Assembly: GCA_051294905.1 (NCBI GenBank)
Contig: CM119379.1
Span: forward strand, 18,290,001-18,354,000
Reading direction: 5' to 3'
Origin: Botryllus schlosseri
Taxonomy: Eukaryota
Length of the DNA: 64,000 bases
Of the stretch, positions 1,111 through 48,600 are shown one piece after another (position 1 is the first letter of the stretch; each line of letters opens with the position of its first letter). A model generated the notes under the pieces. That model was not told the DNA's origin. It searched no databases and saw only the letters and a list, made by a program, of their open reading frames with translations. A program made the translations under genes and the position numbers.

Positions 1111-1554
1111 TGAGCTATATTCTATTCATGACATACCAATCAAAGTAATACACCCTTCTTCTGGTGCACCAGTATCGAAATATTGTCTTTGGAGTGTGCA
1201 TTATATTAATTAGATACGTATAAGGCCCGTGTAGTGAATAATAGGCCTCCATACCTGCAGTCGCACACGTCCGATATCAGATCAGTGAATATCTATGATA
1301 GGCAGAGCCGTTAGTAGGGAAAGCCTATACGCTACATCCACGGAATCGCACAGGTGTTAGTCAATATTATAACAAATATGTATTTACAGCTGCATAATTA
1401 TTCGTAAGCAGAGCTTTTAATACAAAGTAACGATTTTTTTTTTGATCCCGTGTGGATGTCAGAATATCTGTTCACCGCCCGTACACTGAAAATCACGAAG
1501 ATAGTCCTTGCATGCCGTGTAATGAATGAATCTGAATCCGGAAGTGCTCCGGAG

Positions 1555-3060
1555 CTGATAGCTGCGCTTTATTTCAATTCAGACGAACTCCGGAGCTGAT
1601 AGCTGCGCACTATTTCAACTCAGACTTGCTCCAGATCTGATAGCTGCGCACTATTTCAACCAGGACGTGCTCCAGAACTGATAGCTGCGCACTATTTCAA
1701 CCCGGACGTGCTACGGAGCTGATAGCTGCGCACCATTTCAACTAGGACGTGCTCCAGATCTGATAGCTGCGCACTATTTCAACTCAGACTTGCTCCAGAT
1801 CTGATAGCTGCGCACTATTTCATCTCAGACTTGCTCCAGATCTGATAGCTGCGCACTATTTCAACTCAGACTTGCTCCAGATCTGATAGCTGCGCACTAT
1901 TTCAACCCGGACGTGCTACGGAGCTGATAGCTGCGCACCATTTCAACTAGGACGTGCTCCAGATCTGATAGCTGCGCACTATTTCAACTCAGACTTGCTC
2001 CAGATCTGATAGCTGCGCACTATTTCATCTCAGACTTGCTCCAGATCTGATAGCTGCGCACTATTTCAACTCAGACTTGCTCCAGATCTGATAGCTGCGC
2101 ACTATTTCAACCAGGACGTGCTCCAGAACTGATAGCTGCGCACTATTTCAACCCAGACGTGCTCCGGAGCTGATAGCTGCGCACTATTTCAACTCAGACT
2201 TGCTCCAGATCTGATAGCTGCGCACTATTTCAACCAGGACGTGCTCCAGAACTGATAGCTGCGCACTATTTCAACCCAGACGTGCTCCGGAGCTGATAGC
2301 TGCGCACTATTTCAACCCAGACAAGCTCCAGCGCTGATAGCTGCGCCCTAAACGATACGTGACCTTTAAATTACCTGTATGTCTGCGGTTTTTCGTGATA
2401 GATGTGATAGCTGAGTATATCCACAGTAGTGATAGCTGCGCACTATTTCAACTCGGACGTACTCCGGAGCTGATAGCTGCGCACTATTTCCACTCAGACT
2501 TGCTCCGGATGTGATAGCTGCGCACTATTTCAACCTGGACGTGCTCCGGATCTGATAGCTGCGCACTATTTCAACCCAGACGAGCTCCAGCGCTGATAGC
2601 TGCGCCCTAAACGATACATGACCTTTAAATGACCTGTATGTCTGCGATTTTTGGTGATAGATGTGATAGCTGTGATAGCTGAGTATATCCACAGTAGCGA
2701 TAGTGATAGCTGCGCACTATTTCAACCCGGACGTACTCCGGGGCTGATAGCTGCGCACTATTTCAACCAGGAAGTGCTCCGAATCTGATAGCTGCGCACT
2801 ATTTCCACTCAGAGTTGCTTCGGATCTGATAGCTGCGCACTATTTCAACTCAGACGTGCTCCGGATATGATAGCTGCGCACTATTTCATTCCAGACAAGC
2901 TCCAGCGCTGATAGCTGCGCCCTAGACGATACGTGACCTTTAAATGACCTCTATGTCTGCGATTTTTGGTGATAGCTGCGATAGCTGTGATAGCTGAGTA
3001 TATCCACAAGTGATAGCTGCGATAGCTGCGGGAGCTGTGATAGCTGAGTATATCCACGGG
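1555..3060 (+). repeat. 41-bp minisatellite array (~31 units) in three blocks separated by a ~95-110-bp spacer
   Basis: Core ctgatagctgcgcactatttc recurs every 41 bp (1555, 1596, 1637 ... 2334; 20 units). The spacer ccctaaacgatacgtgacctttaaat...gagtatatccaca follows at ~2346, ~2605 and ~2920. Confidence 0.95.
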
Positions 3061-3509
3061 GCCGGGCAATCCGCTAATTTTACGTCATATCAATTCGGTA
3101 TTCCTTATGATCGAACCGGTTAAATTTGAATGATATATATAACGGTATGGCGCACGACCGGGTAAGCCGGTACATTATACGGCGGTGATTATATGCCGTT
3201 AACCAAAATCCGTGCCTAACGCTGCCGTATCCGTGGCGGTAGCGCGGACTTCAAGTTGATACACGTGCGTAACTAGGAAATCCAAAATACAATCCATTAG
3301 GTCTTCTTGTATACTCTCCAAACCTTAATAGACGAACGTTTTGTTAATAAACTATTTCATATTCATGTAATAACCCAAAGGATCGGTCATGGTTCAATGA
3401 TGTGACACGCAAGAAATCACATACCACCGGTGCCCGGCGGGAGTCGGGAAACCGGAGAGCCAAACTATGGGGGGAATCCCCGTCGTTTGATTTGCAGATT
3501 CTCATTCTC

Positions 3510-4301
3510 ACCACTGTGATTCTGCCAGAAAATGCTTACGTCATACTTCCGAAATTGCTGCGTCATTGTTGTCGCAATGATTCACTTGTGCTAAAATCAA
3601 ATATTATAACCGGAAAAACAATTTCGCGACAGATTTGGAGTGCAAACGAGCTGAAACACACGAGTTTTATCATTAAATGGCGCAAACGGTATGATCAATA
3701 CAATATGTAATCGAAACTTGAAGGAGTGCTTCATTTTACAACCGCCAGGTAGTACTTATGGCATCTAAATTTTCAGCCGTTACGTAATATACGCAGGCGG
3801 AGCTATCTCGATTCTCGCCTGTAGCCGAAGCATCAGAGGTTAATTTGTGTTCCTTCCCCCATGTGTGACTATTTCTTGCGGCGGCGAGAGGCCCGGAAAA
3901 AGACTCCACAAATGATTATACGTGATATCGAGGAGAAAAAAAGTAAAAATAATAATATTTAACGAAGACATCCTATCCAACACTGTCATAGGCTATATCG
4001 GCCAATTGGCTCAAGTCGTTTTTGATTAAAATACCATAATACAGGTAAATGCAACATCTTCCTGCCGGTCACCTGCATCGCATTGCACACTATGTGTCTT
4101 GAGCACATCAGAAAATAAATGCTTACGATTATTGCGATTCACGTCATGTTCGTGTTTAGTATAAGTCGACAGTAATACAGTATTTTATGAATTATTCAAT
4201 AAACAGTTAAAACAAAAAAGCAACGGCATTTCTTCTGCTTCGAACATTTTATATATTCGGAAAACTATTTCATCGTGGTTTTACGACGCCTACTTTTTTA
4301 A
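3510..4301 (+). repeat. Left outer (unique) inverted arm
   Basis: Reverse complement of ~12360-12910, apart from two segments present only on the left. Confidence 0.9.
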
Positions 4302-6000
4302 GATCAAAATGCATGATATTGCGTCAAATACGACTTTTCGTCAACTTTGATTTTCGGTCAGTTTCAATCAACAATTAGGACACCCAAAATGTAACGGCGT
4401 GCTCTCTGCTTTGGATATGTTATATATTTGGATAAGTGTTACATCATGATATTAACGATAATATCAAAAAGTTGAGAAATTGTGTACTTTTTGAGGATCA
4501 AAATGCATGATTTTGCGTCAAATGCGACTTTGCGTCCAATTCGATTTCCGGACAGTTTCAATCGATAATTAGGACACCCAAAATGTAACGGCGTGCCCTC
4601 TTCTTCGGATATGTTATATATCTGGATAAGTATTACATCATGATATTAACGATAATATCAAAAAGTTGAGAAATTGCGTACTTTTTGAGGATCGAAATGC
4701 ATGATTTTACGTCAAATACGACATCTCGTCCAATTCGATTTTCGGTCAGTTTCAATCGACAATTAGGACACCCAAAATATAACGGCGTGCCCTCTTCCTT
4801 GGATATGTTATATATATGGATAGGTATTACATCATGATATCAACGATAATATCAAAAAGTTGAGAAATTGTGTACTTTTTGAGGATCAAAATGCATAATT
4901 TTGCGTCAAATGCGACTTTGCGTCCAATTCGATTTTCGGACAGTTTCAATCGATAATTAGGACACCCAAAATGTAACGGCGTGCCCGCTGCTTCGGATAT
5001 GTTATATATCTGGATAGGTATTACATCATGATATTAACGATAATATCAAAAACTTGGGAAATTGTGTACTTTTTGAGGATCAAAATGCATGATTTTGCGT
5101 CAAATGCGACTTTGCGTCCAATTCGATTTTCGGACAGTTTCAATCGATAATTAGGACACCCAAAATGTAACGGCGTGCCCGCTGCTTCGGATATGTTATA
5201 TATCTGGATAGTTATTACATCATGATATTAACGATAATATCAAAAAGTTGAGAAATTGCGTACTTTTTGAGGATCAAAATGCATGATTTTGCGTCAAATA
5301 CGACATCTCGTTCAGTTCGATTTTCGGTCAGTTTCAATCGACAATTAGGACACTCAAAATATAACGGCGTGCCCTCTTCTTTGGATATGTTATATATCTG
5401 GATAGGTATTACATCATGATATTAACGATAATATCAAAAAGTTGAGAAATTGCGTACTTTTTGAGGATCAAAATGCATGATTTTGCGTCAAATATGACTT
5501 TTCGTCCAATTGGATTTTTGATCAGTTTCAATCAACAATTACGACACCCAAAATGTAACGGCGTGCTCTCTGCTTTGGATATGTTATAAATTTGGATAAG
5601 TATTACATTATGGTATTAACGATAATATCAAAAAGTTGAGAAATTGTGTACTTTTTGAGGATCAAAATGCATGATTTTGCGTCAAATGCGACTTTGCGTC
5701 CAATTCGATTTTCGGACAGTTTCAATCGATAATTAGGACACCCAAAATGTAACGGCGTGCCCGCTGCTTCGGATATGTTATATATCTGGATAAGTATTAC
5801 ATCATGATGTTAACGATAATATCAAAAAGTTGAGAAATTGCGTACTTTTTGAGGATCAAAATGCATGATTTTGCGTCAAATATGACTTTTCGTCAAATTC
5901 GATTTTTGATCAGTTTCAATCGACAATTAGGACACTCAAAGTATAGCGGCGTGCCCTCTGCTTTGGATATGTTATGTATTCGAACTAAAAGTTAGTCATG
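4302..6000 (+). repeat. 194-bp tandem array, ~9 units (left arm)
   Basis: gatcaaaatgc recurs at 4302, 4496, 4690, 4884, 5078, 5272, 5466, 5660 and 5854 (period 194). Confidence 0.97.
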
Positions 6001-6347
6001 ATATCAATGATCAGACAATACACACTGCGCCACTCGCATCCCCAATTTCCAAGTATGAAGTTGCCTGTAGACCATAGTTGTGTAAAATATGACTTCACGT
6101 AGAATTCGATTCCTGGTCAATTACTGTTTTACCATGCTGTCCTGTCCTGCTTTGTCATCTTCGTCCCTAATTTTTCTCAGCAACTCCCCTCGAATCAATG
6201 AGTTTCAGACGAATTAATATGCAGATTGAAAATGTGATTTCGAAACGTGCATTTTGTAAAGAACACTCGATGTAGATATAGGATTCTAGACAGGGACGTT
6301 TTGGAGAAAAAACGAATTATTTGAATTCATGCAGCATATCATTCCAA

Positions 6348-9300
6348 TTAATCCAATGAAAACCCAAAGTCTTTTGATATTGAATTGTAGTCCTGATTTT
6401 TCAGTGCCATTGCGAAAAATATCATTCCTTCAAAATGCAGCACTTCGTTTACATATTCTGGGAAATTTCGTTTTTTGTCTTTAAAACTATTAAGCAAAGC
6501 GTTCCCAAACACCTCAGGATTCGGATAAACGACTAAACTGTCTTTTGAGCTGTATAGGGACAATTTCCCGCTCATGTGCTTGAAATATTTAACGGTTCTA
6601 GTTCTAAGGCAAAATTTCGATTTAATGAATTTCAATAAATATTCCAGATGCGTTTCCGTAGTTTCGCTTTCGGCATATTTCAGAGTCGAATTGAATTTTT
6701 TCAGGGATTTTAGTTGTCCTTTCACGAACAGAGAAAGTCGATACCATTCTGCTTTCGTATTTCCATTTTTCATTGACGAGGTGGTAAGTTTTTTCAAATT
6801 GTTTAACATAGAATTCAACTGCATGATAGATGTTCCTGTCCATGTCATATTGTTGAGATTGTTTCCATACCGTGGAACATACGGCACATCTTTCTTTTTC
6901 TCCACAATTGTGCATGTGCCCAAATTAGGCGGCATGCGGCGACGAGGAATTTGCTTTGATCTTGCGTCCTTGATCGTCTCACCAGTTTTTACGTACATCA
7001 GGATTGTAGCATTTTGTTGCGTGTCAAATATTAGCCGATCAGTATTTACCACACGTAATGCGTCGTCGTCAAATACTGTGCAGAATCCATCATGATTGCC
7101 GGTATATGCGAGATAGTGCACCGATGCACACGACGTACCATGATGGATTACTTTCCCTTATAGTGTATAATGGGATTTCAATCCTTCTACTTCGATATCC
7201 ATTGAATCGGGTATCTGGACTGAGGTGATGTTTTTACCCTCTGGAGTTCCGCGACTGACATTTATCACCAGCATGTTGGGAAGGGTTCCGAATACGACAT
7301 GTTCGTCTACATCAGCGTGGCATTGTAGGGATCTGCTGTTAGTATTAACACATTGACGAGGAAAATTTGTGATCAGGTCAGAAATATCACTGTTTTCTTC
7401 AAATGTATGTAAAACAACGGATAGCCGATGTTCTATGAATTTCGAGGGAAATTGCAACGCTTGCAATTGACTTTGCGAATCAATCGAAATTTGGAAGTAA
7501 CCCCCATCTGCTCCATCGCATCGCTCAAGTCCGTATCGAGAATTCTGGTGATGAACTCTCCGGCATCTTGCTGCGTGCCACAATCCCATCCAAACTTTGA
7601 ACATATATCTGATACCAATTTTTCAATGTCAGATACGATGCACTGTTTGCGGCTATCTAAAGTCAATTGCATAATTAATTGCATGAAATCAGAGGTTATG
7701 GATGCGTACCGATATGGCCTTTCAGACATAATGCCAAGCATTGGGTGGTAGCATTGAACCAACAAGAATTCCCAATATTAGGCATACCTTTGGTGCAGGT
7801 CTTAGGGCAAAACGTATTGACAGCGATGTGTCTAATATCGCGGTGAACAGAATGTGACTGACTGACGACTTGAAAACATATCCATATCGGTACATGGTCA
7901 AAACTTTGCTGACATCGGTACCTTCAGAAGGTTGGTCGAGTCCGAAACAAACCCGATCCGCGACAACGCAAACGCAAACGCCGCAGCTCTCAAGATCTGG
8001 CTGCTTAATCGGACATTTTCGTGAAAACGAAACGACCTCGCACTTGGTTAATTTTTGCAGCTCGGGCATTAAATATTCGTTAATAGCCCGGTTAAGACCT
8101 TCGTTCACGTGGTCAATGGAGTCGTATAATGTAATAGTATTGTCATATGAATCAAATACAATCAGCTAGAAATGCCTTTCCCAAACTAATGGATAAAGTC
8201 GCGTCATGATAGCACATGACTTAACATCTGAAGCAGCATTCACTGTAGATAAGCTGGAGCTACGATTTGGAGATCTGAATCCTTTTCCCTGAAGAATCTC
8301 TCTGGTGTTGTCTGGATCAATGCATTCAAAAGCCTTCGACTCATTTTGCTGCGTGGCCAAGGACGCCGATCTTTTAATATAGCAGTATACAACATCCGAC
8401 GTCAGCCAGCCAAGAGGGTGGGATTTCTCAATTTCGTGAAAACTTACGATCGATTCACACATTGAAAGCGGTATGAGAGATTTCAAATCGACCCACAGCA
8501 GAAATGAATCACGTAAATATTGCACAGCAGTGTCAAACATTTGCTCGATTCGATCAAAGTTAGACATATTTTTCCAGATTGCCGTTACCATACCATCACA
8601 TTTTTGGAAGTCCAAAGTAGACCAAGGGTACGGTACTTTTGTTATTTGTGGCAAATCCAATGTAAATGGTACCAAATTGCGTTCTGAAGAGATCGGAGGG
8701 GATGATGGGGCTTGATCCGTCAGATCTATCGTTTCCGAGCAATTCAAGGCAACAGTTTTTGTTGTACGCTGATTGGCGTATTTGATTGTGCTCTTGATGA
8801 TGTTAATCCGATCGCTCGAATAGCATCCTTTACCGCGTGACTTCTTTCGTTTAAACTTTGATTGTACTGTTTTCGAAGTCTTTGATACGGACTGATCACT
8901 TAATTTGTATAAGAATGTTGCCAAATATCCATTTCGATAAAGTGCGTCGAAGAATTTTTTTTCTTGAATCTAAATTGAACGTTTATATTTGACAACGAAA
9001 CTATCCAAACGGTTTGCTCTTTCTTTCCTCGGTATAACATTTTTTAGGAAATCAAAGCTTTGCTCGACGCATCCCTGAGTTCTATTGTCAATTGTGATAT
9101 TGCGGTACCTGGACTTGGCTATCCGTCGGTAATTGTTCGAAAATCCGTTGTACATTTCGGTTTGATTAGCCGTTGAGAAATTGTTACAATGCCGGCTCAG
9201 ATCTCCAATCATTAATTCGGAAGTCGTTGGGATTTTACTTAAAACAAATTTTACAACGATGTCGCAAAAATTGCCATCGTTGTGTACATTCAACTGGCGT

Positions 9301-9556
9301 GACGATCCAGCAAGTTCTGATGAATGGGCTATGTAGTCCTGCGATTCCCGGAATGCTGCCGTCATAGTCCCATACCTGTGACGAAATGGTGATCGGAGCT
9401 CATGATACTCATCTTGCTTTTAAGATTCAATCAAAATAGTCTCGCTAGAGTCTGAGTGTGCGAAGTCTCTCGGGAACGAATCTATTCCATCTACATTGCT
9501 TCCATCTTCTTTCATTATATGGTCGAAATGATCATCAACAAAAGTTGACGAATACC
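6348..9556 (-). pseudogene. Disrupted polyprotein: transposase-like tail + Ulp1/SENP (C48) protease + USP (C19) deubiquitinase + C-terminal domain of unknown function
   Basis: One frame runs from ~9555 to ~7880 through stops at 9420, 8970 and 8166. It includes RTQGCVEQSFDFLKN, GWLTSDVVYCYI, RHF*LIVFDSYDNTITLYDS and KQPDLESCG. After frameshifts come GMPNIGNSCWFN, QQDAGEF, LPNMLVINVSR, YTL*GKVIHHGTSCASVHYLAY, FDD and ATILMYVK. Confidence 0.85.
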
Positions 9557-9667
9557 TGTAAAATATGAATATATATTCGAAGATACCATCACTGAATGAC
9601 ACATCATTTTACGCACCATATATGTAGGAATATGGGAGCACATATATGTGGAGGCTTGTGTAACTCA

Positions 9668-12360
9668 TCGTTAATATCATGATGTAATACCTATCCAGAT
9701 ATATAACATATCCAAAGAAGAGGGCACGCCGTTATATTTTGGGTGTCCTAATTGTCGATTGAAACTGACCGAAAATCGAATTGGACGAGATGTCGTATTT
9801 GACGCAAAATCATGCATTTCGATCCTCAAAAAGTACGCAATTTCTCAACTTTTTGATATTATCGTTGATATCATGATGTAATACTTATCCAAATATATAA
9901 CATATCCAAAGCAGAGAGCACGCCGTTACATTTTGGGTGTCCTAATTGTTGATTGAAACTGACCGAAAATCGAATTGGACGAAAAGTCATATTTGACGCA
10001 AAATCATGCATTTTGATCCTCAAAAAGTACGCAATATCTAAACTTTTTGATATTATCCTTAATATCATGATGTAATAGGTATCCAGATATATAACACATC
10101 CAAAGCAGAGGGCACGCCGTTACATTTTGGGTGTCCTAATTGTCGATTGAAACTGACCGAAAATCGAACTGGACGAGATGTCGTATTTAACGCAAAATCA
10201 TGTATTTCGATCCTCAAAAAGTACGCAATTTCTCAACTTTTTGATATTATCGTTAATATCATGATGTAATACTTATCCAGATATATAACATATCCAAGGA
10301 AGAGGGCACGCCGTTACATTTTGGGTGTCCTAATTGTCGATTGAAACTGATCAAAAATCGAATTGGATGAAAAGTCATATTTGACGCAAAATCATGCATT
10401 TCGATCCTCAAAAAGTACGCAATTTCTCAACTTTTTGATATTATCGTTGATATCATGATGTAATACTTATCCAAATATATAACATATCCAAAGCAGAGAG
10501 CACGCCGTTACATTTTGGGTGTCCTAATTGTTGATTGAAACTGACCGAAAATCGAATTGGACGAAAAGTCATATTTGACGCAAAATCATGCATTTTGATC
10601 CTCAAAAAGTACGCAATATCTAAACTTTTTGATATTATCGTTGATATCATGATGTAATACTTATCCAAATATATAACATATCCAAAGCAGAGAGCACGCC
10701 GTTACATTTTGGGTGTCCTAATTGTTGATTGAAACTGACCGAAAATCGAATTGGACGAAAAGTCATATTTGACGCAAAATCATGCATTTTGATCCTCAAA
10801 AAGTACGCAATATCTAAACTTTTTGATATTATCCTTAATATCATGATGTAATAGGTATCCAGATATATAACACATCCAAAGCAGAGGGCACGCCGTTACA
10901 TTTTGGGTGTCCTAATTGTCGATTGAAACTGACCGAAAATCGAACTGGACGAGATGTCGTATTTAACGCAAAATCATGTATTTCGATCCTCAAAAAGTAC
11001 GCAATTTCTCAACTTTTTGATATTATCGTTAATATCATGATGTAATACTTATCCAGATATATAACATATCCGAAGCAGAGGGCACGCCGTTACATTTTGG
11101 GTGTCCTAATTGTCGATTGAAACTGATCAAAAATCGAATTGGATGAAAAGTCATATTTCACGCAAAATCATGCATTTCGATCCTCAAAAAGTACGCAATT
11201 TCTCAACTTTTTGATATTATCGTTGATATCATGATGTAATACTTATCCAAATATATAACATATCCAAAGCAGAGAGCACGCCGTTACATTTTGGGTGTCC
11301 TAATTGTTGATTGAAACTGACCGAAAATCGAATTGGACGAAAAGTCATATTTGACGCAAAATCATGCATTTTGATCCTCAAAAAGTACGCAATATCTAAA
11401 CTTTTTGATATTATCCTTAATATCATGATGTAATAGGTATCCAGATATATAACACATCCAAAGCAGAGGGCACGCCGTTACATTTTGGGTGTCCTAATTG
11501 TCGATTGAAACTGACCGAAAATCGAACTGGACGAGATGTCGTATTTAACGCAAAATCATGTATTTCGATCCTCAAAAAGTACGCAATTTCTCAACTTTTT
11601 GATATTATCGTTAATATCATGATGTAATACTTATCCAGATATATAACATATCCAAGGAAGAGGGCACGCCGTTATATTTTGGGTGTCCTAATTGTCGATT
11701 GAAACTGACCGAAAATCGAATTGGACGAGATGTCGTATCTGACGCAAAATCATGCATTTCGATCCTCAAAAAGTACGCAATTTCTCAACTTTTTGATATT
11801 ATCGTTAATATCATGATGTAATACTTATCCAGATATATAACATATCCGAAGCAGAGGGCACGCCGTTACATTTTGGGTGTCCTAATATTCGATTGAAACT
11901 GACCGAAAATCGAATTGGACGAAATGTCGTATTTGACGCAAAATCGTGCGTTTTGATCTTAAAAAAAGGACGCAATTTCTCAACTTTTTGATATTATCCC
12001 TAATATCATGATGTAATAGGTATCCAGATATATAACATATCCAAAGCAGAGGGCACGCCGTTACATTTTGGGTGTCCTAATTGTCGATTGAAACTGATCA
12101 AAAATCGAATTGGACGAAAAGTCATATTTCACGCAAAATCATGCATTTCGATCCTCAAAAAGTACGCAATTTCTCAACTTTTTGATATTATCCCTAATAT
12201 CATGCTGTAATAGGTATCCAGATATATAACATATCCAAAGAAGAGGGCACGCGGTTACATTTTAGCTGTCCTAATTGTCGATTGAAACTGTCCGAAAATC
12301 GAATTGGACGAATAGTCGTATTTGAAGCAAAATCGTGCGTTTTGATCTTAAAAAAGTAGG
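9668..12360 (-). repeat. 194-bp tandem array, ~14 units (right arm, inverted relative to the left array)
   Basis: Units start at 9673, 9867, 10061, 10255, 10449, 10643, 10837, 11031, 11225, 11419, 11613, 11807, 12002 and 12196, and are the reverse complement of the left array unit. Confidence 0.97.
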
Positions 12361-12910
12361 CGTCGTAAAACCACGATGAAATAGTTTTTCGAATATATAA
12401 AAGCAGAAGAAACGCCGTTGCTTTTTTGTTTTAACTGTTTATTGAATAATTCATAAAATACTGTATTACTGTCGACCTATACTAAACACGAACATGACGT
12501 GAATTTTTACTTTTTTTCTCCGCGATATCACGTACACTCATTTGTGGAGTCTTTTTCCGAGGGGAAGGAACACAAATTAACCTCTGATGCTTCGGCTACA
12601 GGCGAGAATCGATGTAGATCCGCCTGCGTAGATCACGTAACGGCTGAAAATTTAGATGCCATAAGTACTATCTGGCGGTTGTAAAATGAAGCACTCCTTC
12701 AAGTTTCGATTACATATTGTATTGATCATACCGTTTGCGCCATTTATTGATAAAACTCGTGTGTTTCAGTTCGTTTGCACTCCAAATCTGTCGCGAAATT
12801 GTTTTTCCGGGTATAATATTTGATTTTAGCACAAGTGAATCATTGCGACAATAATGACTCGGCGATATCGGAAATATGACGTAAGCATTTTCTGGCAGAA
12901 TCACAGTGGT
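12361..12910 (-). repeat. Right outer (unique) inverted arm
   Basis: Reverse complement of 3510-4301. It lacks left-arm segments ~3860-3893 and 3951-4138. Confidence 0.9.
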
Positions 12911-14221
12911 TCATTCTCCGTTACGATCATGCGACGTGCGTGGTTCCCGTTCGCCTATGTTGCGATTCGAGATTAGTTTTGATTTGACTAATATTGTCAA
13001 CTGATGAGGTAAATTGCTCCAAAGAATTGAGTTGTATATTATATTATGTACTTAAACCAGGATTATTTCGCTCAAGTGAATACCAGGCCTGTTTTTTGTT
13101 GCTTCAATTTGTTAATTTTCCTGCCGTTGGTGTGTTGTGGTTATCTGTATATACCGTTGGAGGTTCGAGTTTGATTGATTCGTTACTCCAACTCATTCAT
13201 GGTATCGCGACCTTGTGGTGCGTGGAAACTGATGAAAATATTGATTATGAAATGAATATAAATGAAAAAATGGTCATATGCCTTAGGCTATTGATAGAAT
13301 AACTTGAATCAAAATTTAAATTTTATCTTGTTTTATTTGAGCAAAAAGCTACATATAATTTAGAAATATTATGTCAATGGCATAATGGAAGAAACTTTCA
13401 ATTTTTTAATCACCAATATTTTGATACAATGAAAAGACAGCAAGAACACGTAAATGAGCAGCATGCTCATTGCTCAACAGTGTTGTGGCTTGTGGTCAAG
13501 TCACTATTGTCGAGTCACAAAAACTTTAAAATTGGCTGGAGTCGAGTCAAGTGAGTCACTTTTAGGTCTACTCTACGCTGACCGCGACTCTCAGGCCAAT
13601 TCTGCCTATTTGTGACATTTTGTATATAAGCATTAAACTCCAGCGTGCATATATATCAAGTTTCATGGAGAACACAGTTGATGATCATGGGGAATGCTGT
13701 TTAAGTGTTTATTAGCTGTCATTGGGAGTATTGGTATTGGTAATCAATACGCGTCAAGTCAATAGTGTATCAATACTCAATAGTGCATCAAATGTACAGC
13801 AGTGCTGCAATGGTCTTACATACTGTAACTCTGTAACAATGTCGATTATCGGCTTTAAGATTGATTACGATATATTATGATTTACATTAAGGCCCGGTTT
13901 TATAAAATTTTATGCTCGGGTCACCAGATTTGAAAGATCACATATTATTATCAGAGACGGAGAGATTTATTTTGTCAACCGATAACGCGAAAAAATAGAA
14001 GACGTATCGGTGTATAAATATGCAGTATCCAACGTTGGTATTGACTGGTGTACCAGTGATACGATCATGACGATCTTCATGTCAACTGGAACCAGAGTGT
14101 ACGGTTAGCCTATTCAAAGAAAATAATTTCATAAACTAAAAATGATTCAACGATATATAATCAATTGTTTTATTTTTTAAAATGGTGTAGATATATTATA
14201 GTCGAATATCCTAGTGCGAGA

Positions 14222-14888: not shown

Positions 14889-15044
14889 ACATTATCACCG
14901 ATTTCTTGATATTAGAATGATTCAAACTATTCTTTGAATGAATTATTGTATCTTTTACCAAGACGATGTAACAGCAGTACAATTTCTTATTTACAAATTG
15001 CGCCATTTCTCTTTTTAATAGGACTTGAGAAACTGTGAAGTGTG

Positions 15045-16895
15045 ATGCGTTGCGTGATCCTCGTTGCGGGCCACGGGGCTAGGCTGGAGGAAGACATAAA
15101 ACATGATACATCTGGGAAGTACAGCTCGTTGATCGGAATTCCGAAAGCTCTTCTGCCGGGTGTTGATGGAAGGAAAATAATGGATTATTGGTGGAAAATC
15201 ACGAATGTACGTCAAATCTTCAGTGACGTGTACCTTGTCACTAATGCCGCGAAGTACAAGCACTTTGAACGATGGGCTACTGCGAATGATTTTCCTGTAG
15301 CAAATATCATCAACGACGGGTCGACAACAAAAGATACAATGCTTGGTGCGGTGGGAGATTTTGATCTGGCTCTGCGGAATAAAAACGTTGACGATGATGT
15401 TGTTGTCGTTGCTGGCGACATGCTGTTTGAAGATCAAAATTTCGATATCTCGCAAGTTGTGCGATATTTTCGGCACAAAGCCGGGGATTTAGCGATCTAT
15501 TATGAGATGGATAGCAGCGAGCCGTCTACTTCTCGTGGCATTGTGGAGGTCGATTTTGCCACAAACAAAATCACAAAATTCTACGAGAAACCAAATCCAG
15601 GAGTCACAGAATCGAGACTTGCTAGCGTAGTGTTCTATTGCTTCCGTCAAAGTACGTTAAAGACCGTCCGTACGTATTTAGAGAGCCCACAATGCGGGCG
15701 TGCACCAAATTTTGGAAAATACATGGAGTGGCTTATAAATATCAAAAAAATTGATGTGTACGGTATGAAGTTGCCAACAAGATTCCAGCTCATTGGCGAA
15801 GTCACGTTGGCAGATTACCAAATGAGGTTGGATTACTTCGGTAAAATGAAAGAACTGAGTGCCAGGCAAAAACTGATAACCAACCGCGCCTACGCTAGAG
15901 TCGGACTCATGGGTAATCCTAGCGATGGATTTTACGGAAAAACCATTTCCCTCTCGATTTCAAACTTCTGGGCCGACGTGACGATAATGGAAAGCGAGAA
16001 ATTGGTGTTGACGCCGCATCCGCTTAACGACCCGACCACGTTTGGAAGCCTGCACGATCTCCATGGAATAAGCCGTAAAGAAGGATACCTCGGCGGGCTG
16101 CGCCTCTTGCAAGCTACTTGCAAGAAGTTCTATGAATTTTGCAACGAAAGAGGAATAGCCCTATACAAGAAAAATTTCACTTTGAGCTACGACACGAATA
16201 TACCCCGTCAAGTCGGTCTCGCTGGTAGTAGCGCGATTGTGTCGGCTACACTGAAATGCCTGGTGCAGTTTTTCAACCTGAACGAGTCCGACTTGCCAAA
16301 GCCGCTCCGTGCCACTTTTATTCTGAACGTCGAAACTGACGAGTTATTCATCAATGCCGGATTGCAGGATCGCGTGATACAAGTATATGAGGGCCTGATG
16401 TACATGGATTTCCGAAGAGAGTTACTCGAGGATAAGGGTTACGGGGAATATGAACGCCTCAGCGCCGAAGATCTGCCGCAAATATGGCTCGCATATCTCG
16501 CCGATCCGAGTGATTCCGGAAGGATTCACAGCACTGTCCGGCAACGGTTTGATGCCGGAGACGAAGACGTTCGAAAAGCTATGGTGAGATTCGCAAAATA
16601 TACGGATGACGCGAAAGAGGCGATCGTTGAGAGAAACTGGACGCAGCTAGCGTCGCTCATGAACGATAACTTTAATTTGCGCAAGGAAATCTACACCGAA
16701 GAGTGTATCGGCGAAATGAACATGGAAATGGTTAAGATAGCAAGGCGATATGGATCGAGCGCAAAATTTTCCGGTAGCGGTGGCGCTGTGATCGGGATTT
16801 GTTTTGACCGAGAAAAATTGGCAGCGTTGAAACTTGATATGCAGTCGCAGGACTTTGTTATATGTGATATAGTGCCGAATCTTCCGTCTGAGTAG
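15045..16895 (+). CDS. gkup: Bifunctional glucuronokinase / putative UDP-sugar pyrophosphorylase (nucleotidyltransferase-GHMP kinase fusion), 616 aa, intronless
   Basis: N-terminal ILVAGHGARL...PKALLP...VVVAGDML are sugar-nucleotidyltransferase motifs. C-terminal AYARVGLMGNPSDGFYGKTIS, PRQVGLAGSSA and KFSGSGG match glucuronokinase-type GHMP kinases. Confidence 0.88.
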   Translation: MRCVILVAGHGARLEEDIKHDTSGKYSSLIGIPKALLPGVDGRKIMDYWWKITNVRQIFSDVYLVTNAAKYKHFERWATANDFPVANIINDGSTTKDTMLGAVGDFDLALRNKNVDDDVVVVAGDMLFEDQNFDISQVVRYFRHKAGDLAIYYEMDSSEPSTSRGIVEVDFATNKITKFYEKPNPGVTESRLASVVFYCFRQSTLKTVRTYLESPQCGRAPNFGKYMEWLINIKKIDVYGMKLPTRFQLIGEVTLADYQMRLDYFGKMKELSARQKLITNRAYARVGLMGNPSDGFYGKTISLSISNFWADVTIMESEKLVLTPHPLNDPTTFGSLHDLHGISRKEGYLGGLRLLQATCKKFYEFCNERGIALYKKNFTLSYDTNIPRQVGLAGSSAIVSATLKCLVQFFNLNESDLPKPLRATFILNVETDELFINAGLQDRVIQVYEGLMYMDFRRELLEDKGYGEYERLSAEDLPQIWLAYLADPSDSGRIHSTVRQRFDAGDEDVRKAMVRFAKYTDDAKEAIVERNWTQLASLMNDNFNLRKEIYTEECIGEMNMEMVKIARRYGSSAKFSGSGGAVIGICFDREKLAALKLDMQSQDFVICDIVPNLPSE

Positions 16896-17535: not shown

Positions 17536-35644
<18,109 letters not shown>

Positions 35645-42621: not shown

Positions 42622-45600
42622 ATGGTAAGATAAGGAGTAGTAACGTCTCTACGGCACTGTTATGTAACTATATACTCCTACCGGTACAGTGGCGTTGACT
42701 GCGTACCTGGGAGTATCGTCAGTATATTAACATGGTGTTTACTATTTGCTCAAGGCGTATGAGTCAGTAACTGAGTTTGCGCAAGCATTAAAATAGCGTT
42801 ACCGATTCCGTATGCTTCTTACACGGATACCATCTTGGACACGTTCTGAACGATAACCATCTGCATTTTACAACTTTTAGATTCCAAAAGAGGAGCTTTT
42901 TGATGACAGTTTGACGAATTTACAATGGTTGCAAAATCTCAACGTAAACATTGGCTGTCCGGTGCCGCCGATCCCATCCGGTGGCGTCGATTCCACTCGA
43001 ACGAATGGAGCTTGCCGGAGAATCCGGGGTAGCGGCGGTGTGCCGATTAACAGCAGACTGTCCAAACCGAAAAACTCGTCAAATAGTCCAAAAGACGCGA
43101 TTTGTAACAACGGCGAGCGGCGGAACGCTAAGTTGCAATCAAATTTATTGAACGGCAAATCAAAAGGACTGAAAAAACAGCCGCTTCCGCCTTTAATTCC
43201 ACAAAGTCGAACCCCTGTGCCAGGACAGTACCGATCACGGGTCGGTATGCCTAACAGGGACCCGCAGAAAGACTCCCTGCCGCGACTGAGCGGCAGCAAT
43301 GACAGCTTGAAGCTGAATACGAAACTCTGTGAAAACGCAATCATGCTGAACGCATCGCCTGAACTAGCCCTCCTGTCAGATGCCACGAACAATCAATACG
43401 TGCTGTCCCCCCGCCAAATGGACCTCGATTTGTTCCCGGGACAGGTGGACTACAAGAACAACCCTTACATAAAACCGCCTTATTCGCACCTGGCTTTGAT
43501 CTGCATGGCTTTGAGGCGAAGCAGGTCGGACAAAATGACAATTCAGAAAATCTGCGAGTGGATAAAGACCAACTTCAGCTACTACAGAGTGATCGGCTCT
43601 GATTGGCAGGTGCGATATTTTTACTCACCATATGCATGCATTTTACATCAATCTTGTTTCCAAGGGGTTTCTGTAAATAGTTATAATGAATCGGATACTG
43701 ACGTATGAGGTTGTCGGATACCTCCTGTTCGTTGAAATGTTAGCTGTCACATTGTTCATTTTGTTGGTCGTGTGTAGCCGCTGTCAACGATAAACTCTTA
43801 TCTCGTGAAAACAGTTTTATTCGCTATAAAATTTGACTATTAAACTAACAAAATAAATAGTCATTTCACCATGTAGTCAACCCTAAGAAGACCACAGAAA
43901 GCGGTTGTAACCAGTCGTTATTGCATGCCCAAGCACTTCCACGCCGCACAGGCAAGGCTAATTTTGCGCTGGTCTGAAATTGCGTCCCATAAACTCGATT
44001 CAACCCATTCATCGCTGCGGGAAACTGAGTTTAAGTTCTATAATCCCATTCTTTGCTTTTCATTCAAATTTTGTTCATCATTTCGCTAATAAAGTTTTCG
44101 CTGTCTCGCAACATCACAATATTCCGGCATTCTGTAAAAGACATGTAGGAAAGTGTATAACGACTAATTGCACTTAATTCGTGAGACGGTACCGGCCTCA
44201 GTGTTGTACAATATATCTAAAATATCAAAATTAGTCTCAAAACAGTCATACGCGGTCCACATCAAGCGAGGAAATACAGTGATGGTCACAAATACATATA
44301 TCAGCATTCTGGGAATATATTTTGTAATCGTTTAGTTCTAAAAGAATCCCGTAATAGCTTAACATAGGGTCATATCTATCACAATTTTAATGATCAGTTG
44401 AATGGTTTGCAAAGCCTTCCTCTGGAGGCAATCGTCAATGGATATATGGTCACCCGGCATCCCAAGCACCTGTATGGCTGTATACATAACTACAATAAAC
44501 TCTATTGTGCACCGGTGCCCACGTAATTCATACCTGTGTCATGATAAACTTCCGGTATGTGTAATGTAGCTCCCGGATTCGTTACTTTCTTTCGATTTAT
44601 CCGCAAGGATAACTCGCAAAGTCATAACGTCATATCTCGAATTGTCTTGATGTTTTGATTGGCTATTATGCGACGAGTTATAGCGTGTATGTGTTGTAAT
44701 CTTTTCTGATATTCATCTCGAGCCGCCGCTGCCACAAACATTCATTAATAGGAATTACGGCTATTGTCGCCAGGATATTTTTAGCGATCAAAGTCTTCCA
44801 CTGTATTATAGTCCGGCACTCCTGTTGGACTGTGGTCATTTGATCGTTCGCTCGGATTATTTTTTCCAGGGCAATCAAAGCAAGATTAGCATTGCCCTCC
44901 ATTATTTGTCTTTCGTGCTATTGCAAGTATGGCGTTTCGATTTAAAAATGAATGGTACTGTGATGAAATTTGCAATATTTAAGGTTCACCACATAATATT
45001 ACTGTTGTGACGAAGTTTGGAATCCAAAACAGCGATTTTTATGCGCGTATTTCGACTATCAAATTGTCTGTATTCTACCCTTTCGCTAGCCAGGTGGATA
45101 TAGGAGGTTCTTTGATTGTACCAGTACATCTGCCTTCAACACCGCAACCTAATGCGCATTTAGCTTCTGGTATACTCCTCTGATCCCCTGTAAAAACGTG
45201 TTGGCTGGCGCGCTTATACCTTTACCGTAATCATCCTGTGTAAACACGCAGTATATTATGTCTATATATAGTCGACGGCTTGTCAAATAATTTTATAAAA
45301 CAAGTACCAATGGTATGAATAGTTAGGACTCGACGCATGGGGTAACCGCAACGTTTGTCGGAACTTGGAAGCAAAAGGCCCAACCTCATCGTTGAGCACT
45401 TTCGGTAATATATTAATCTGTGTCAGCGAAGGAATGCGTCATCATCACATCCCAATTGGAATAATGTTCTTAATTGAGTGGAATTTTACAGGAATGTAGC
45501 CTTCGAAATGTGACGGCTATTTATATAGAGTAGGTTACGCGATGTCGAATCAGCTTATAAGACAAGATATAGTTGGGACGATTTTAAACGTTTGCGCCAT

Positions 45601-48600
45601 TGGCACTGTCGTCACGGCAGGCTTCTTCGCCCCGTAAGTGCGCGGCTTAAAACGACCGCCGACTTTACGGGACGCGCCTTCAGAAATACAATTCACTGGT
45701 CTGTATTTGACCTCTAAACAAACATTCGCGTCAAAGTAGGCTATTATTCCTTGCGACTTCGCGAATCGAATTTTTATAGGCCTTTATTGAAGTTAGTTGT
45801 TGAACGCTGTTCCTGCCGCTTTATCTACGGTTTTACGGCGTGCCCCGCGTGCGTGCAAGATTTCGGATGAATTCCACTTTCTCCCAAATCCGATCCAATT
45901 TCTTGTTAAGCTGAACCAACACTCTAATCACGACCAGTCGACTATGTAGAACGCATGCGCCTTATACTTCATATCTGTATTTGCGATTCTTATGCGAACC
46001 TGGTAGTGTGACTATTGGCCAGGGTAGGTATGATTTTTCAGATGATCAGTAACGAAGTACTTCTACTTAGTCTATTTCCATTTCCACTTGATCAGTTTTA
46101 AGGCAAAACTACTTGCTTTCTACAATTTTGACTTCCAAAATTATAAAGTAGTTTTGTCTTAAGTTTTGATCACTTACCACGCGAAATAGCCCGTGTATAT
46201 GTATAAGCATATGTCTGAAGATTGTATGTATTTCTAGTGTCGTGTTATTCGTTTTGCATTCGTCACTAAAATACATTTGCCATTCCGGAGTAGTCACCTT
46301 CGATCAACTGCTAAAATTAGACCACCATACGACCAAATCTACTTTTTCAAACTACCTTGAAGTAGTTTTGAGTGTTTCGGAAATAGCTGCAGCCTGCAGG
46401 TCTATAAATTTACGGCGTTACTCCTAGACTTGAGTAGCAACGCTGACTACTTTGACCATATTTGTGGTTTTGTAGAAATACAGTCGACACCGGTATACCC
46501 TTGTCCCTTTTAAGCTGGTTTCGTATATTGGTGTCCGGCCTGCTGCATATGTCCGAATGCTATTGTGAAATTAGATCTCTATACTTGTACAAACGGTATG
46601 TAACTCCTCAGCACGGGGTGCTAGCTGCGGACGTATCGAGTTGCAATACATAATTGTAAATGGCGTAATATGTCCTGGGCGGAATGCGATGCTGACCGGC
46701 GTGGTAGGGCGAAAGTGTCGGGTTGCAAGCTGTCTTTTGTGCCCTGCGCCATTGATAACAATGCAAGAATATGTTCTGCTACGTAAACCGGCGAAATCCC
46801 GTACCGAGACACCTTCGCATTCAGCCGCGAGAGCCATGAGGATGCTCACAACAATTGGCCGTTCTTACCGTGAAATGGATCCGTTGGAATTGTGAAGCCT
46901 CATCCTTGTAACATCAGCCTCGGTTATGCGATACCTTCACCCGTAAAGGGCACATTGTTCGGATTTGAAAAAAAGCCATCGGTATTGCGGATGGGGCCTG
47001 CGGCTTTAAATTGGAGCGAATCATAATCCATGAAAGGCGATTGCGCACAATGAAATCGGTCGGAAACAACTCGATGTCTGTAACAATTGTTCATTGTGTT
47101 GCGTGCGTCCATGAAGCTTGTCCCGTTTGTTTTGCTCGACCATCTTGAATTCCACGAGAGCCACTTGAAGCGCTGTGAGAGAGTTAACCGTTGGGTTTAC
47201 CAATAAAATAATACAGGCCACAATATCTGTACGCAGATGTGGGATTAATGCGTTTGCTCGCGAAAGCCGCTACACTTTGTAGCGACCGTTGTAACATTGT
47301 TGTATTATTAGCTTAATACCCATGCTTCGTGACTGTTTTCCGGCCTACTCAATAAGCTCAAGCCATGCTAGCCTGTTCCTAGTGTGTCATGGTTGCAATA
47401 CATCGATAACACTGTCAGATGGTCGGTAACGAATACTTTTACATAACCTGAAATCGCTATTTCTACTTGTACTTGAGTATATATTAGTGACGTTTCTTCT
47501 AGTTCAATTTGAATATCAAAAGCGACTTCTTTGACCATCTCTGTTCATAATACTGTCCCACAGAGTCGTTTTTAAACGTGTGACGAAAATGAAAAGCATA
47601 CTTTGTGAAATTATGGCAACGGGTTTTGCTGTAATCGATTCCCGGAAGATATCGCTGTTATTTCAGCGAAATCGGACTGAGAACACGGATATGTCCGTAA
47701 ATCCTAATTGTTGGGTTAGCGTTCGATTATACTGCACAGGGCTTTCTAGGATAGCTAAGCGCGTCATTATCGACGGGGCCGCATTCGTTTGAATAGCCCA
47801 TTGTGAACTCACAACAAAAGGTTTCAACACTTCTTATCAGCTGCGCTTACGCGGACAGTGTAGTTCCAGAACAAATCAAATTTGCCAGCTTATCGGGCGA
47901 TGCTTCGCTGAAAATGTTCCCTAATCGCTAAGCAAGGAACATAAAATGTCCGGATTGTCCGTCTTGTTAACACATTAACCCATGCGACATCATCTTAACA
48001 CCATTACTAGTTCTAGAAAATGTGTTCTCGCCAGTGTTTACCGAGGCTTCGGTGAGGTAATAAAGGTTATCAGTCGCCCGTATTGTTGCGGTTGGCAGAA
48101 GCGCTGACCGAAGCCAGCGCGATTTATGACGTTGGGTGTTGGTTTGGCGCAGACAAAAGAAGGGTTTGGTTTAACGCCGATTCCATCCCTCCGTGTATTG
48201 CTTCGTAGGCCAGACGGGACATGTCGCGATGAATGACACTAAAACACACAAACCTTACCTCTTTATTCCAATTAATTACAATAACAAATATTCCCTTGAT
48301 AAACAAAGGCGCAGCGTCGTCGCAATTTCGATTTCTGAACTGGGATTGCTAAGGACCGTTCAGAAGCCAGATTTAACGTGAGAGATATGATGTGCGCATG
48401 AGACAAATTACTAAATCATGTGTTGCTCGCGTTATTGCATGTTTACGGGTTTGTATACTGTATAAGTTACAGTCGCGATTCGTACACCATGTGGTTAGGA
48501 CACTATTCCCGGAATATTCACCATTACAGTTATCCATATCAGTTTGATTCCACAAACTTATGTTATAGCGCGTTATTATATTAGCCCTGTTTTAAAGCAT

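What the first reader, a model, noticed from the sequence alone, without database searches (positions are those of the whole stretch)
6348..9556. Transposon-borne tandem deSUMOylase + deubiquitinase in one ancestral polyprotein
Seen: reading through four nonsense codons (9420, 8970, 8166, 7158) and about three frameshifts (~7880-7800, ~7740-7700, ~7445) reconstructs a ~1070-aa protein. It has a Ulp1/SENP domain with His (RHF), Asp (LYDS), oxyanion Gln and Cys (KQPDLESCG). A complete USP domain follows, with Cys box (GMPNIGNSCWFN), QQDAGEF, a CKRC zinc-finger pair, His box (VIHHG...HYLAY) and FDD. All catalytic residues are still present. Established: Ulp1-type proteases occur in Zisupton, some MULEs and Helitrons, and SUMO and ubiquitin signalling are used in transposon silencing. 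Inference: an element carrying both a C48 and a C19 isopeptidase could remove both marks as an anti-silencing device. I do not know of this fusion being described, but could not search.
Basis: partly seen in the sequence, partly recalled or inferred. Interest (0 to 1): 0.9.

Follow-up and report, generated by a model that had tools for sequence, protein, structure and literature searches.

The report
Dead transposon copy with two proteases
This stretch is the broken remnant of the single long gene of a foldback-type jumping gene; in intact relatives that gene joins a transposase to a SUMO-type and a ubiquitin-type protease, an unusual combination, but this copy is dead and has lost the transposase core.

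Summary
On the minus strand of 6348-9602 a roughly 1085-codon reading is broken by four stop codons (9420, 8970, 8166, 7158) and three frameshifts (7886, 7705, 7448). It carries a Ulp1/SENP-type (C48) domain followed by a USP (C19) domain, both with their catalytic residues.

It is the inner part of a 9.4-kb foldback element (3510-12910) with 350-nt terminal inverted repeats, an exact 8-bp target-site duplication and inverted arrays of a 194-bp satellite.

Three intact or near-intact relatives from other samples (2074, 1905 and 1735 aa) and one decayed locus show the same order in one reading frame: PHD finger, Mutator-like transposase, Ulp1-like domain, USP domain. The fusion is therefore a family trait, not a captured fragment.

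The window copy begins at the equivalent of residue 1162 of the 2074-aa relative, so it has lost the PHD finger and the transposase core. Sibling copies in the same species are unbroken at four of the seven lesions.

The C48 assignment rests on motif register, a profile search, language-model features and a fold match to SENP/Ulp1 structures. Pfam's C48 model itself does not match.

The anti-silencing role is untested. This scan already reported an intact copy of this family on other DNA of the same genome (s1-234232). I found no paper describing the tandem C48+C19 transposase.

The parts
3502..3509 (.). Left target-site duplication, TCATTCTC
   Evidence: Exact 8-bp match with 12911-12918; lengths 3-7 and 9-12 do not match.
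3510..3859 (+). Left outer terminal inverted repeat (350 nt)
   Evidence: 95.7-96% complementary to 12561-12910.
3860..4290 (+). Left subterminal spacer, partly matched in the right arm
   Evidence: 3894-3950 pairs with 12559-12503 and 4137-4299 with 12504-12350. 3951-4136 has no partner.
4291..5979 (+). Left arm: array of a 194-bp satellite, 8.7 copies
   Evidence: Tandem Repeats Finder, 91% matches. It is inverted relative to the right array at 90-93%.
5980..6347 (-). Non-coding stretch downstream of the gene remnant
   Evidence: Unique in the window. It lies between the stop codon 6348-6350 and the left array.
6351..6960 (-). Conserved C-terminal tail after the USP domain, function unknown
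   Evidence: Aligns with the tail of P0004 (BLASTP E 2e-4, 24% identity over 193 residues; alignment). P0001 lacks it.
6961..7815 (-). USP (peptidase C19) domain remnant, broken by a stop at 7158-7160 and frameshifts at 7705 and 7448
   Evidence: Colinear tblastn with the UCH domains of P0001 and P0004. Cys box, QQD motif, CxxC, His box and DD are all present. Weak Pfam UCH hits on two pieces, in the right order along the profile.
7860..8600 (-). Ulp1/SENP-like (peptidase C48) domain remnant, broken by a stop at 8166-8168 and a frameshift at 7886
   Evidence: Aligned with P0001, P0003, P0004 and P0005; His, Asp, Gln and Cys are conserved. Profile search of solved structures hits only SENPs, best E 0.007. 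Model of relative P0005 matches SENP/Ulp1 folds at E 1e-7.
8601..9551 (-). C-terminal part of the transposase region plus a basic linker, with stops at 9420-9422 and 8970-8972
   Evidence: tblastn: window 9551-7947 equals P0001 residues 1162-1699 and P0003 residues 951-1492. The DDE core of the relatives (weak MULE hit near P0001 1015-1074) has no counterpart here.
9552..9666 (-). Deletion junction between the gene remnant and the right satellite arm
   Evidence: Homology to the relatives ends at 9551. Contigs of other copies leave the window sequence at 9660/9661 with two other continuations (table 7).
9667..12358 (-). Right arm: array of the 194-bp satellite, 13.9 copies
   Evidence: Tandem Repeats Finder, 92% matches; inverted relative to the left array.
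12359..12560 (-). Right subterminal spacer
   Evidence: Pairs with 3894-3950 and 4137-4299.
12561..12910 (-). Right outer terminal inverted repeat
12911..12918 (.). Right target-site duplication, TCATTCTC

Best explanation
Shown. The stretch is the decayed 3' two-thirds of the single long gene of a foldback-type DNA transposon of the Mutator superfamily, closest in layout to Rehavkus/NOF-like elements. The copy spans 3510-12910. It inserted by cut-and-paste, leaving an 8-bp target duplication. An internal deletion removed the 5' part of the gene (PHD finger and DDE transposase core), and the copy carries seven disabling lesions. It makes no working protein and could move only if an intact copy supplied transposase. 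In relatives, one reading frame encodes PHD finger, Mutator-like transposase, a Ulp1/SENP-fold cysteine protease, a USP-type deubiquitinase and, in some, a conserved tail.

Inferred. Both protease domains keep their catalytic residues across relatives only 27-50% identical, so both are probably active isopeptidases selected for the element's benefit. The most likely role is that they travel with the transposase to the element's chromatin, perhaps guided by the PHD finger. There they would strip SUMO (or NEDD8) and ubiquitin from the transposase itself, from histones or from silencing and repair factors. That would keep the transposase stable and the element accessible, and would bias how the excision break is handled.
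For: Element anatomy: inverted repeats, satellite arms and target duplication.

Homology of the remnant to three long proteins with the same order of parts: tblastn E 3e-41 and 2e-44.

Domains in the relatives:
- Pfam UCH at E 9e-20 in P0001 and 1e-19 in P0004; PHD in all three, above Pfam's cut-off only in P0004.
- Weak MULE hits at the same profile positions in P0001 and P0003 (E 0.077 and 0.033).
- Language-model neighbours of the transposase part are MULE clusters (score 0.93).

Ulp1-like domain:
- Catalytic His, Asp, Gln and Cys are conserved in all five sequences.
- All nine hits of the profile search of solved structures are SENP1, 2, 5 or 8 (best E 0.007).
- Atlas score 0.97 with 200 of 256 shared features to Peptidase_C48 clusters.
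- The AlphaFold model of P0005 (pTM 0.70) matches SENP5, SENP3, Ulp1, SENP2 and NEDP1 at E 1e-7 to 1e-6. The 50 best of the 54 hits at E <= 0.001 are listed and all are clan CE proteases.

Family context:
- A fourth colinear locus, L004.
- Relatives L002 and L003 carry 176-bp and 186-bp satellite arrays upstream of the gene.
- Sibling copies in the same species are unbroken at 7160, 7448, 7705 and 7886. One 2445-nt contig from an RNA-labelled run spans the Ulp1-to-USP junction at 97.4% identity.

Literature: Rehavkus elements are foldback transposons with long inverted ends, subterminal tandem repeats and a PHD finger (PMC6446971; bioRxiv 10.1101/2024.12.02.626372).
Against: - Pfam's Peptidase_C48 model hits neither the window pieces nor the relatives, even at E 10.
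- The MULE assignment of the transposase is below Pfam's threshold.
- The target duplication is 8 bp, whereas Rehavkus is listed with 9 bp (PMC6446971).
- No Repbase Rehavkus or NOF sequence could be compared.
- Whether the other three stops (9420, 8970, 8166) are open in sibling copies was not in the rows shown.
- The intact copy in this genome is known only from an earlier unchecked note.
- Nothing here tests enzyme activity, substrate or any effect on silencing. Clan CE enzymes can act on SUMO, NEDD8 or ubiquitin.
- The RNA-labelled runs may contain DNA, so transcription is not shown.
Confidence: 0.85

Rival explanations
1. Function rival A, steering of DNA repair. The two isopeptidases act after excision and integration. 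They would remove SUMO and ubiquitin from repair and checkpoint factors (PCNA, H2A/H2AX and similar) so that the donor break and the insertion gaps are repaired in the element's favour, rather than countering silencing.
For: Bao, Kapitonov and Jurka proposed this for the Ulp1 and OTU domains of transposases (PMC2836005, read). The fusion to the transposase in one reading frame puts the proteases at the site of DNA cleavage.
Against: There is no direct evidence here. The PHD finger suggests chromatin reading rather than recognition of repair factors. This role is not exclusive of the anti-silencing role.
Confidence: 0.3
2. Function rival B, self-processing polyprotein. One or both proteases cut the long protein into a separate transposase and accessory parts, as clan CE proteases do in adenoviruses, poxviruses and Polintons.
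For: The Foldseek list includes pox core proteases, which have the same fold (ranks 41 and 47).
Against: No Gly-Gly is conserved at the domain junctions. The only aligned GG lies inside the transposase core. USP and Ulp1 enzymes cut after a folded ubiquitin-like domain, and none is seen in the protein.
Confidence: 0.1
3. The protease-coding part is a host gene fragment captured once by this copy (Pack-MULE style), or a host pseudogene that happens to lie between two inverted satellite blocks.
For: Mutator-like elements are known to capture host fragments (PMC6446971, PMC8277862). The window copy has no transposase core.
Against: The same order, transposase end then Ulp1-like then USP, is found in one reading frame in P0001, P0003 and P0004 and in L004, from other samples. 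The window remnant still carries about 270 residues of the transposase region directly upstream, in the same frame. Sibling copies of the same sequence exist in the species. The terminal repeats and target duplication bound the whole unit.
Confidence: 0.03
4. In intact copies of this species the Ulp1-like and USP parts are two separate genes or are joined only by splicing, so the fusion in the window reading is an artefact of reading through breaks.
For: The junction region 7900-7700 holds two of the three frameshifts. P0003 ends inside its USP domain.
Against: P0001 and P0004 run through the junction without a stop. Sibling contigs in four runs carry +1 nt at 7886; three of the runs carry +1 nt at 7448, and one contig (X2) shows +22 nt at 7705. 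Together these 24 nt bring the three parts into one frame, and the 2445-nt X6 and 2106-nt X2 contigs, each with 24 gap letters, span the junction.
Confidence: 0.05

Closest known systems
Rehavkus / FB-NOF-type foldback transposons (Mutator superfamily, Repbase)
   Same: [quoted passage not shown] A single long gene with a PHD finger and a distant Mutator-type transposase. Found in invertebrates (PMC6446971; bioRxiv 10.1101/2024.12.02.626372).
   Different: The target duplication here is 8 bp, not the listed 9 bp. The published descriptions I could read mention no protease domains. No Repbase sequence could be compared, so membership is by layout and weak MULE similarity only.
Ulp1-bearing Mutator-like elements (plant KI-MULEs/CUMULE; hydra and lancelet MuDR) and Ginger1 transposases with Ulp1, with or without PHD
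   Same: A C48 Ulp1-type domain, sometimes with a PHD finger, on or beside a DDE transposase (PMC2836005).
   Different: Those carry Ulp1 alone (in Ginger1 either OTU or Ulp1, 'but not both'). Here a USP/C19 domain follows the Ulp1-like domain in the same reading frame.
Transposases or Helitron-like elements with a ubiquitin hydrolase (Trichomonas IS5-like transposase + Peptidase C19; Helentron subgroups with UCH)
   Same: A C19/UCH deubiquitinase domain carried by a mobile element (PMC2836005; PMC11417382).
   Different: The transposition enzyme differs (IS5-type DDE or RepHel), there are no foldback arms, and no tandem C48 domain is reported.
SENP/Ulp1/NEDP1 proteases (MEROPS C48, clan CE)
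   Same: Fold match at E 1e-7 and TM 0.53-0.70. His-Asp-Cys triad and oxyanion Gln in register.
   Different: Sequence too far for Pfam PF02902, at 14-18% identity to solved structures. Substrate unknown.

Membership tests
Peptidase C48 (Ulp1/SENP) | Match to Pfam PF02902 above the gathering score | tested here: not met
   No hit for the window pieces or for the Ulp1-like parts of P0001, P0003 and P0004, even at E 10.
Peptidase C48 (Ulp1/SENP) | Catalytic His, Asp and Cys plus oxyanion Gln in the canonical order | tested here: met
   H(F), DS and Q..D..SCG are conserved in the window copy, P0001, P0003, P0004 and P0005. They align with the same residues of SENP1 in the HMMER alignment.
Peptidase C48 (Ulp1/SENP) | Clan CE / Ulp1 fold | tested here: met
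   AlphaFold model of relative P0005:30-262 has pTM 0.70, with the core at pLDDT 60-85. Foldseek against PDB: 54 hits at E <= 0.001; the 50 listed are all SENP, Ulp1, NEDP1 or other CE proteases, best 1.3e-7. A first model of P0001 failed (pLDDT 44). The window copy itself was not modelled.
Peptidase C48 (Ulp1/SENP) | Isopeptidase activity on SUMO or NEDD8 | not testable with these tools
   Needs enzyme assays.
Peptidase C19 (USP/UCH, PF00443) | Pfam UCH match above the gathering score | tested here: inconclusive
   Window pieces score 16.8 and 12.6 bits against a cut-off of 23.9, in the right order along the profile. Relatives P0001 and P0004 pass clearly (71.8 and 71.4 bits), and the window pieces align colinearly with them.
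Peptidase C19 (USP/UCH, PF00443) | Cys box, QQD motif, His box and catalytic Asp | tested here: met
   All are present in the window copy at 7750-7788, 7553-7573, 7104-7151 and 7062-7076. The Gly before the catalytic His is Val here.
Rehavkus / NOF-type foldback Mutator transposon | Long inverted ends with subterminal tandem repeats | tested here: met
   350-nt outer inverted repeats plus inverted 194-bp arrays of 8.7 and 13.9 copies.
Rehavkus / NOF-type foldback Mutator transposon | 9-bp target-site duplication | tested here: not met
   An exact 8-bp duplication; 9 bp does not match. Eight bp is within the range I recall for the Mutator superfamily (from my own knowledge, not checked here).
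Rehavkus / NOF-type foldback Mutator transposon | Transposase with a PHD finger | tested here: inconclusive
   That part is deleted from the window copy. It is present in relatives: P0004 25.9 bits (passes), P0001 22.2 and P0003 17.5 bits (below the cut-off of 24).
Rehavkus / NOF-type foldback Mutator transposon | Mutator-type DDE transposase, related to Repbase Rehavkus or NOF proteins | tested here: inconclusive
   Pfam MULE at E 0.033 and 0.077, at the same profile positions in two relatives. Atlas neighbours are MULE clusters at 0.93 with 161-168 shared features. The core is absent from the window copy.

The most novel reading that the evidence does not exclude
A lineage of foldback Mutator-like transposons of marine animals carries, fused to its transposase, two different ubiquitin-like-modifier proteases (a clan CE Ulp1-type and a USP). 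Together they would work as a counter-defence module, erasing SUMO-dependent and ubiquitin-dependent silencing or degradation marks at the element. As far as I could find, this would be the first mobile element described with a dual isopeptidase.
Probability: 0.3. Interest if true: 0.75.

Novelty: new variant of a known kind. Interest (0 to 1): 0.45.

Why it matters
SUMO and ubiquitin conjugation are central to transposon silencing and to the handling of DNA breaks. Single Ulp1, OTU or UCH domains on mobile elements have long been noted, but their role has never been tested. A family that keeps two different isopeptidases in one transposase, across relatives only 27-50% identical, argues that removing these marks is worth a great deal to the element. 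It also offers a compact natural system to test that idea. This window's copy adds only a dead, truncated example. Its value is that it confirms the architecture independently and shows that the family is multi-copy in this genome.

Tried and rejected
- Pfam on the seven separate pieces gave only weak UCH hits and no C48 hit.
- phmmer of the 252-aa piece against 1.84 billion representatives gave two hits. One (P0002) is a repetitive protein and unrelated.
- A second word-based search from P0004 found only P0004 itself. A profile search with the Ulp1-like alignment found only P0005, another element fragment, and no canonical C48 protein.
- The scan of metagenome contigs with the Ulp1+USP alignment returned 22 loci that match the USP part only. 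These are generic USPs, not relatives of the family.
- The first AlphaFold model (P0001:1480-1750) was unusable (pLDDT 44) and was not searched.
- Adding P0005 to the profile did not improve the search of solved structures (best E 0.013).
- Locus L001 shows no terminal repeats or arrays; the contig is probably too short.
- The satellite monomer and the inverted-repeat tip of the window element have no DNA similarity to loci L001-L004.
- Rfam found nothing in the window.
- Five literature searches found no description of a tandem C48+C19 transposase.
- I built no repaired or joined reading of the gene. Breaks were marked with X, inside scripts only.
Full report
**What is in the sequence**

Translating the minus strand of 6200-9700 in three frames shows one main reading frame from 9602 down to the stop at 6348-6350. 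It has four in-frame stops: TAA 9420-9422, TAG 8970-8972, TAG 8166-8168 and TAA 7158-7160. It also has three changes of frame.

- Ulp1-type part: GWLTSDVV, His in WERHF, Asp in TLYDS, Gln and Cys in KQPDLESCG.
- USP part: Cys box GMPNIGNSCWFNA, QQDAGEF, CKRCN, His box VIHHG...SVHYLAY, FDDD.

Pfam on the seven open pieces, searched apart, gives only sub-threshold UCH hits (E 0.005 and 0.11). These fall in the right order along the profile. There is no C48 hit. The stretch is unique in the window.

**Surroundings**

The stretch is the core of a 9.4-kb foldback element, 3510-12910:
- The outer inverted repeats are 350 nt and 96% complementary (3510-3859 and 12561-12910).
- Inside them lie inverted arrays of a 194-bp satellite, 8.7 copies on the left (4291-5979) and 13.9 on the right (9667-12358).
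- The element is flanked by an exact 8-bp duplication, TCATTCTC.

This agrees with an earlier first-stage note on the same stretch (s1-278711).

**Relatives**

phmmer of the 252-aa piece against 1.84 billion representative proteins found one real relative, P0001. It is 2074 aa and comes from a TARA marine metagenome scaffold. A word-based search from P0001 added P0003 (1735 aa) and P0004 (1905 aa), each from a long contig of a different ENA assembly.

Pfam on these relatives:
- UCH at E 9e-20 (P0001) and 1e-19 (P0004).
- A PHD finger near the N-terminus of all three.
- A weak MULE hit at the same profile positions in P0001 and P0003.
- The language-model neighbours of the transposase part are MULE clusters.

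tblastn of the three proteins on the window is colinear:
- 9551-7947 equals P0001 residues 1162-1699 (E 3e-41) and P0003 residues 951-1492 (E 2e-44).
- The Cys-box piece follows in the next frame, then the middle of the USP domain in the third frame, then the His-box part back in the first frame.

A fourth locus, L004, is a decayed copy with the order PHD, transposase, a 3.9-kb interruption, Ulp1-like domain and start of USP. L002 and L003 carry 176-bp and 186-bp satellite arrays upstream of the gene.

The order PHD, Mutator-like transposase, Ulp1-like, USP in one reading frame is therefore a family trait.

**What this copy is**

Homology starts at the equivalent of P0001 residue 1162. The window copy therefore keeps only the last ~270 residues of the transposase region. 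It lacks the PHD finger and the DDE core.

Contigs of other copies in the species leave the window sequence at 9660/9661, just where the window runs into the satellite. That marks an internal deletion.

Laying contigs of two DNA runs and two RNA-labelled runs of the same species on 5990-9680 shows a multi-copy family about 2.5% diverged from this copy. The sibling copies are unbroken at four of the seven lesions:
- 7160 A>T, turning TAA into AAA.
- One extra base at 7448.
- 22 extra bases at 7705.
- One extra base at 7886.

A 2445-nt contig from an RNA-labelled run and a 2106-nt DNA contig each span the Ulp1-to-USP junction with exactly 24 gap letters. The other three stops were not among the rows shown.

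No contig in the RNA-labelled runs is 99% or more identical to the window. This copy is therefore not shown to be transcribed, and DNA carry-over in those runs cannot be excluded.

**Is the first domain really C48?**

Pfam's model does not see it. Four other lines agree that it is:
- The catalytic His, Asp, Gln and Cys are conserved in the window copy and four relatives at 24-51% identity.
- A profile of the domain hits only SENP1, 2, 5 and 8 among 177,635 solved sequences (best E 0.007), with the catalytic residues in register.
- The protein atlas places it with Peptidase_C48 clusters at 0.97 with 200 of 256 shared features.
- A second AlphaFold model (P0005, pTM 0.70) matches SENP5, SENP3, Ulp1, SENP2 and NEDP1 at E 1e-7 to 1e-6. 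The 50 best of its 54 hits at E <= 0.001 are listed and all are clan CE proteases.

Substrate is open, because CE enzymes act on SUMO, NEDD8 or ubiquitin.

**The USP domain and the tail**

The alignment with P0001 and P0004 shows every catalytic element. The Gly before the catalytic His is replaced by Val.

After the USP domain, about 200 residues align with the tail of P0004 (E 2e-4). P0001 lacks this tail, and its function is unknown.

**Mechanism**

Shown: the anatomy, the family architecture and the conservation of catalytic residues.

Inferred: both proteases are active and serve the element. I favour removal of SUMO/NEDD8 and ubiquitin at the element's chromatin and on the transposase. 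That would be counter-silencing and stabilisation, with the PHD finger as the chromatin reader. Steering of DNA repair (Bao et al., PMC2836005) is a close second and not exclusive.

Self-cleavage of a polyprotein is unlikely. No Gly-Gly is conserved at the junctions, and no ubiquitin-like domain is seen.

**Compared with what is known**

- Rehavkus elements are described as foldback transposons with long inverted ends, subterminal tandem repeats and a PHD finger, placed in or beside the Mutator superfamily (PMC6446971, PMC4455052, bioRxiv 10.1101/2024.12.02.626372). This element fits that layout except for its 8-bp duplication.
- Ulp1, with or without PHD, on animal Mutator and Ginger1 transposases is published, as is a C19 domain on a Trichomonas transposase (PMC2836005).
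- UCH and C48 occur separately in Helitron-like elements (PMC11417382).
- I found no paper describing both in tandem on one transposase. Repbase entries could not be read.

An earlier follow-up in this scan (s1-234232) reported an intact 11.6-kb copy with a 1674-aa four-domain protein elsewhere in this genome. I used it as a lead and confirmed the architecture independently through other relatives, but I could not see that copy.

**Verdict**

This copy is a dead, 5'-deleted member of the family. The family is a new variant of a known kind, Ulp1-bearing Mutator-type transposons with an added USP.

Noticed in passing
window 1544-2924: An array of a 41-bp tandem repeat (33.7 copies, 79% matches) lies about 600 bp left of the element. 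It is unrelated to the 194-bp satellite.
   Followed up: no
window 4291-5979 and 9667-12358: Several 194-bp monomers of the left arm (five rows between 4512 and 5907; the call covered the right arm too and listed none there) hold a short internal direct duplication of about 17 nt, consensus TTTGCGTCAAATGCGAC. These could be transposase-binding sites. The 40-70-aa ORFs listed inside the arrays are by-products of the repeat.
   Followed up: no
L002:1-5700 and L003:3218-8539, compared with the window arrays: Three distant relatives carry arm satellites of similar unit length (176, 186 and 194 bp) without detectable sequence similarity. Unit length, rather than sequence, may be what is kept.
   Followed up: partly
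window 6351-6960 (- strand) and P0004:1690-1905: A conserved tail of about 200 residues follows the USP domain. It is shared with P0004 but absent from P0001, and no family was assigned.
   Followed up: partly
L004:2998-10900: This is a decayed copy in the same assembly as P0004. Its transposase is closer to P0001 and P0003 (55%) than to P0004 (44%). About 3.9 kb is inserted between the transposase and Ulp1-like parts. Two lineages of the family seem to coexist in one sample.
   Followed up: partly
L002:10001-16193: P0003 ends inside its USP domain, and a further ORF is called right after it up to the contig end. That copy may carry a stop or a frameshift.
   Followed up: no
window 15042-16895 (+): An uninterrupted 617-aa ORF has a nucleotidyl-transferase domain followed by GHMP-kinase N and C domains, the layout of a sugar-1-kinase/pyrophosphorylase. 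It is unusual as an intron-free ORF in an animal-like window.
   Followed up: no
window 28222-30123 (+): A 633-aa ORF with no Pfam match, in a stretch of raised G+C content.
   Followed up: no
window 42911-43708 (+): An ORF with a partial Forkhead domain (E 8e-12). It lies just upstream of, and overlaps the start of, the stretch 43440-48940 where the scan noted a FoxJ1-like forkhead domain.
   Followed up: no
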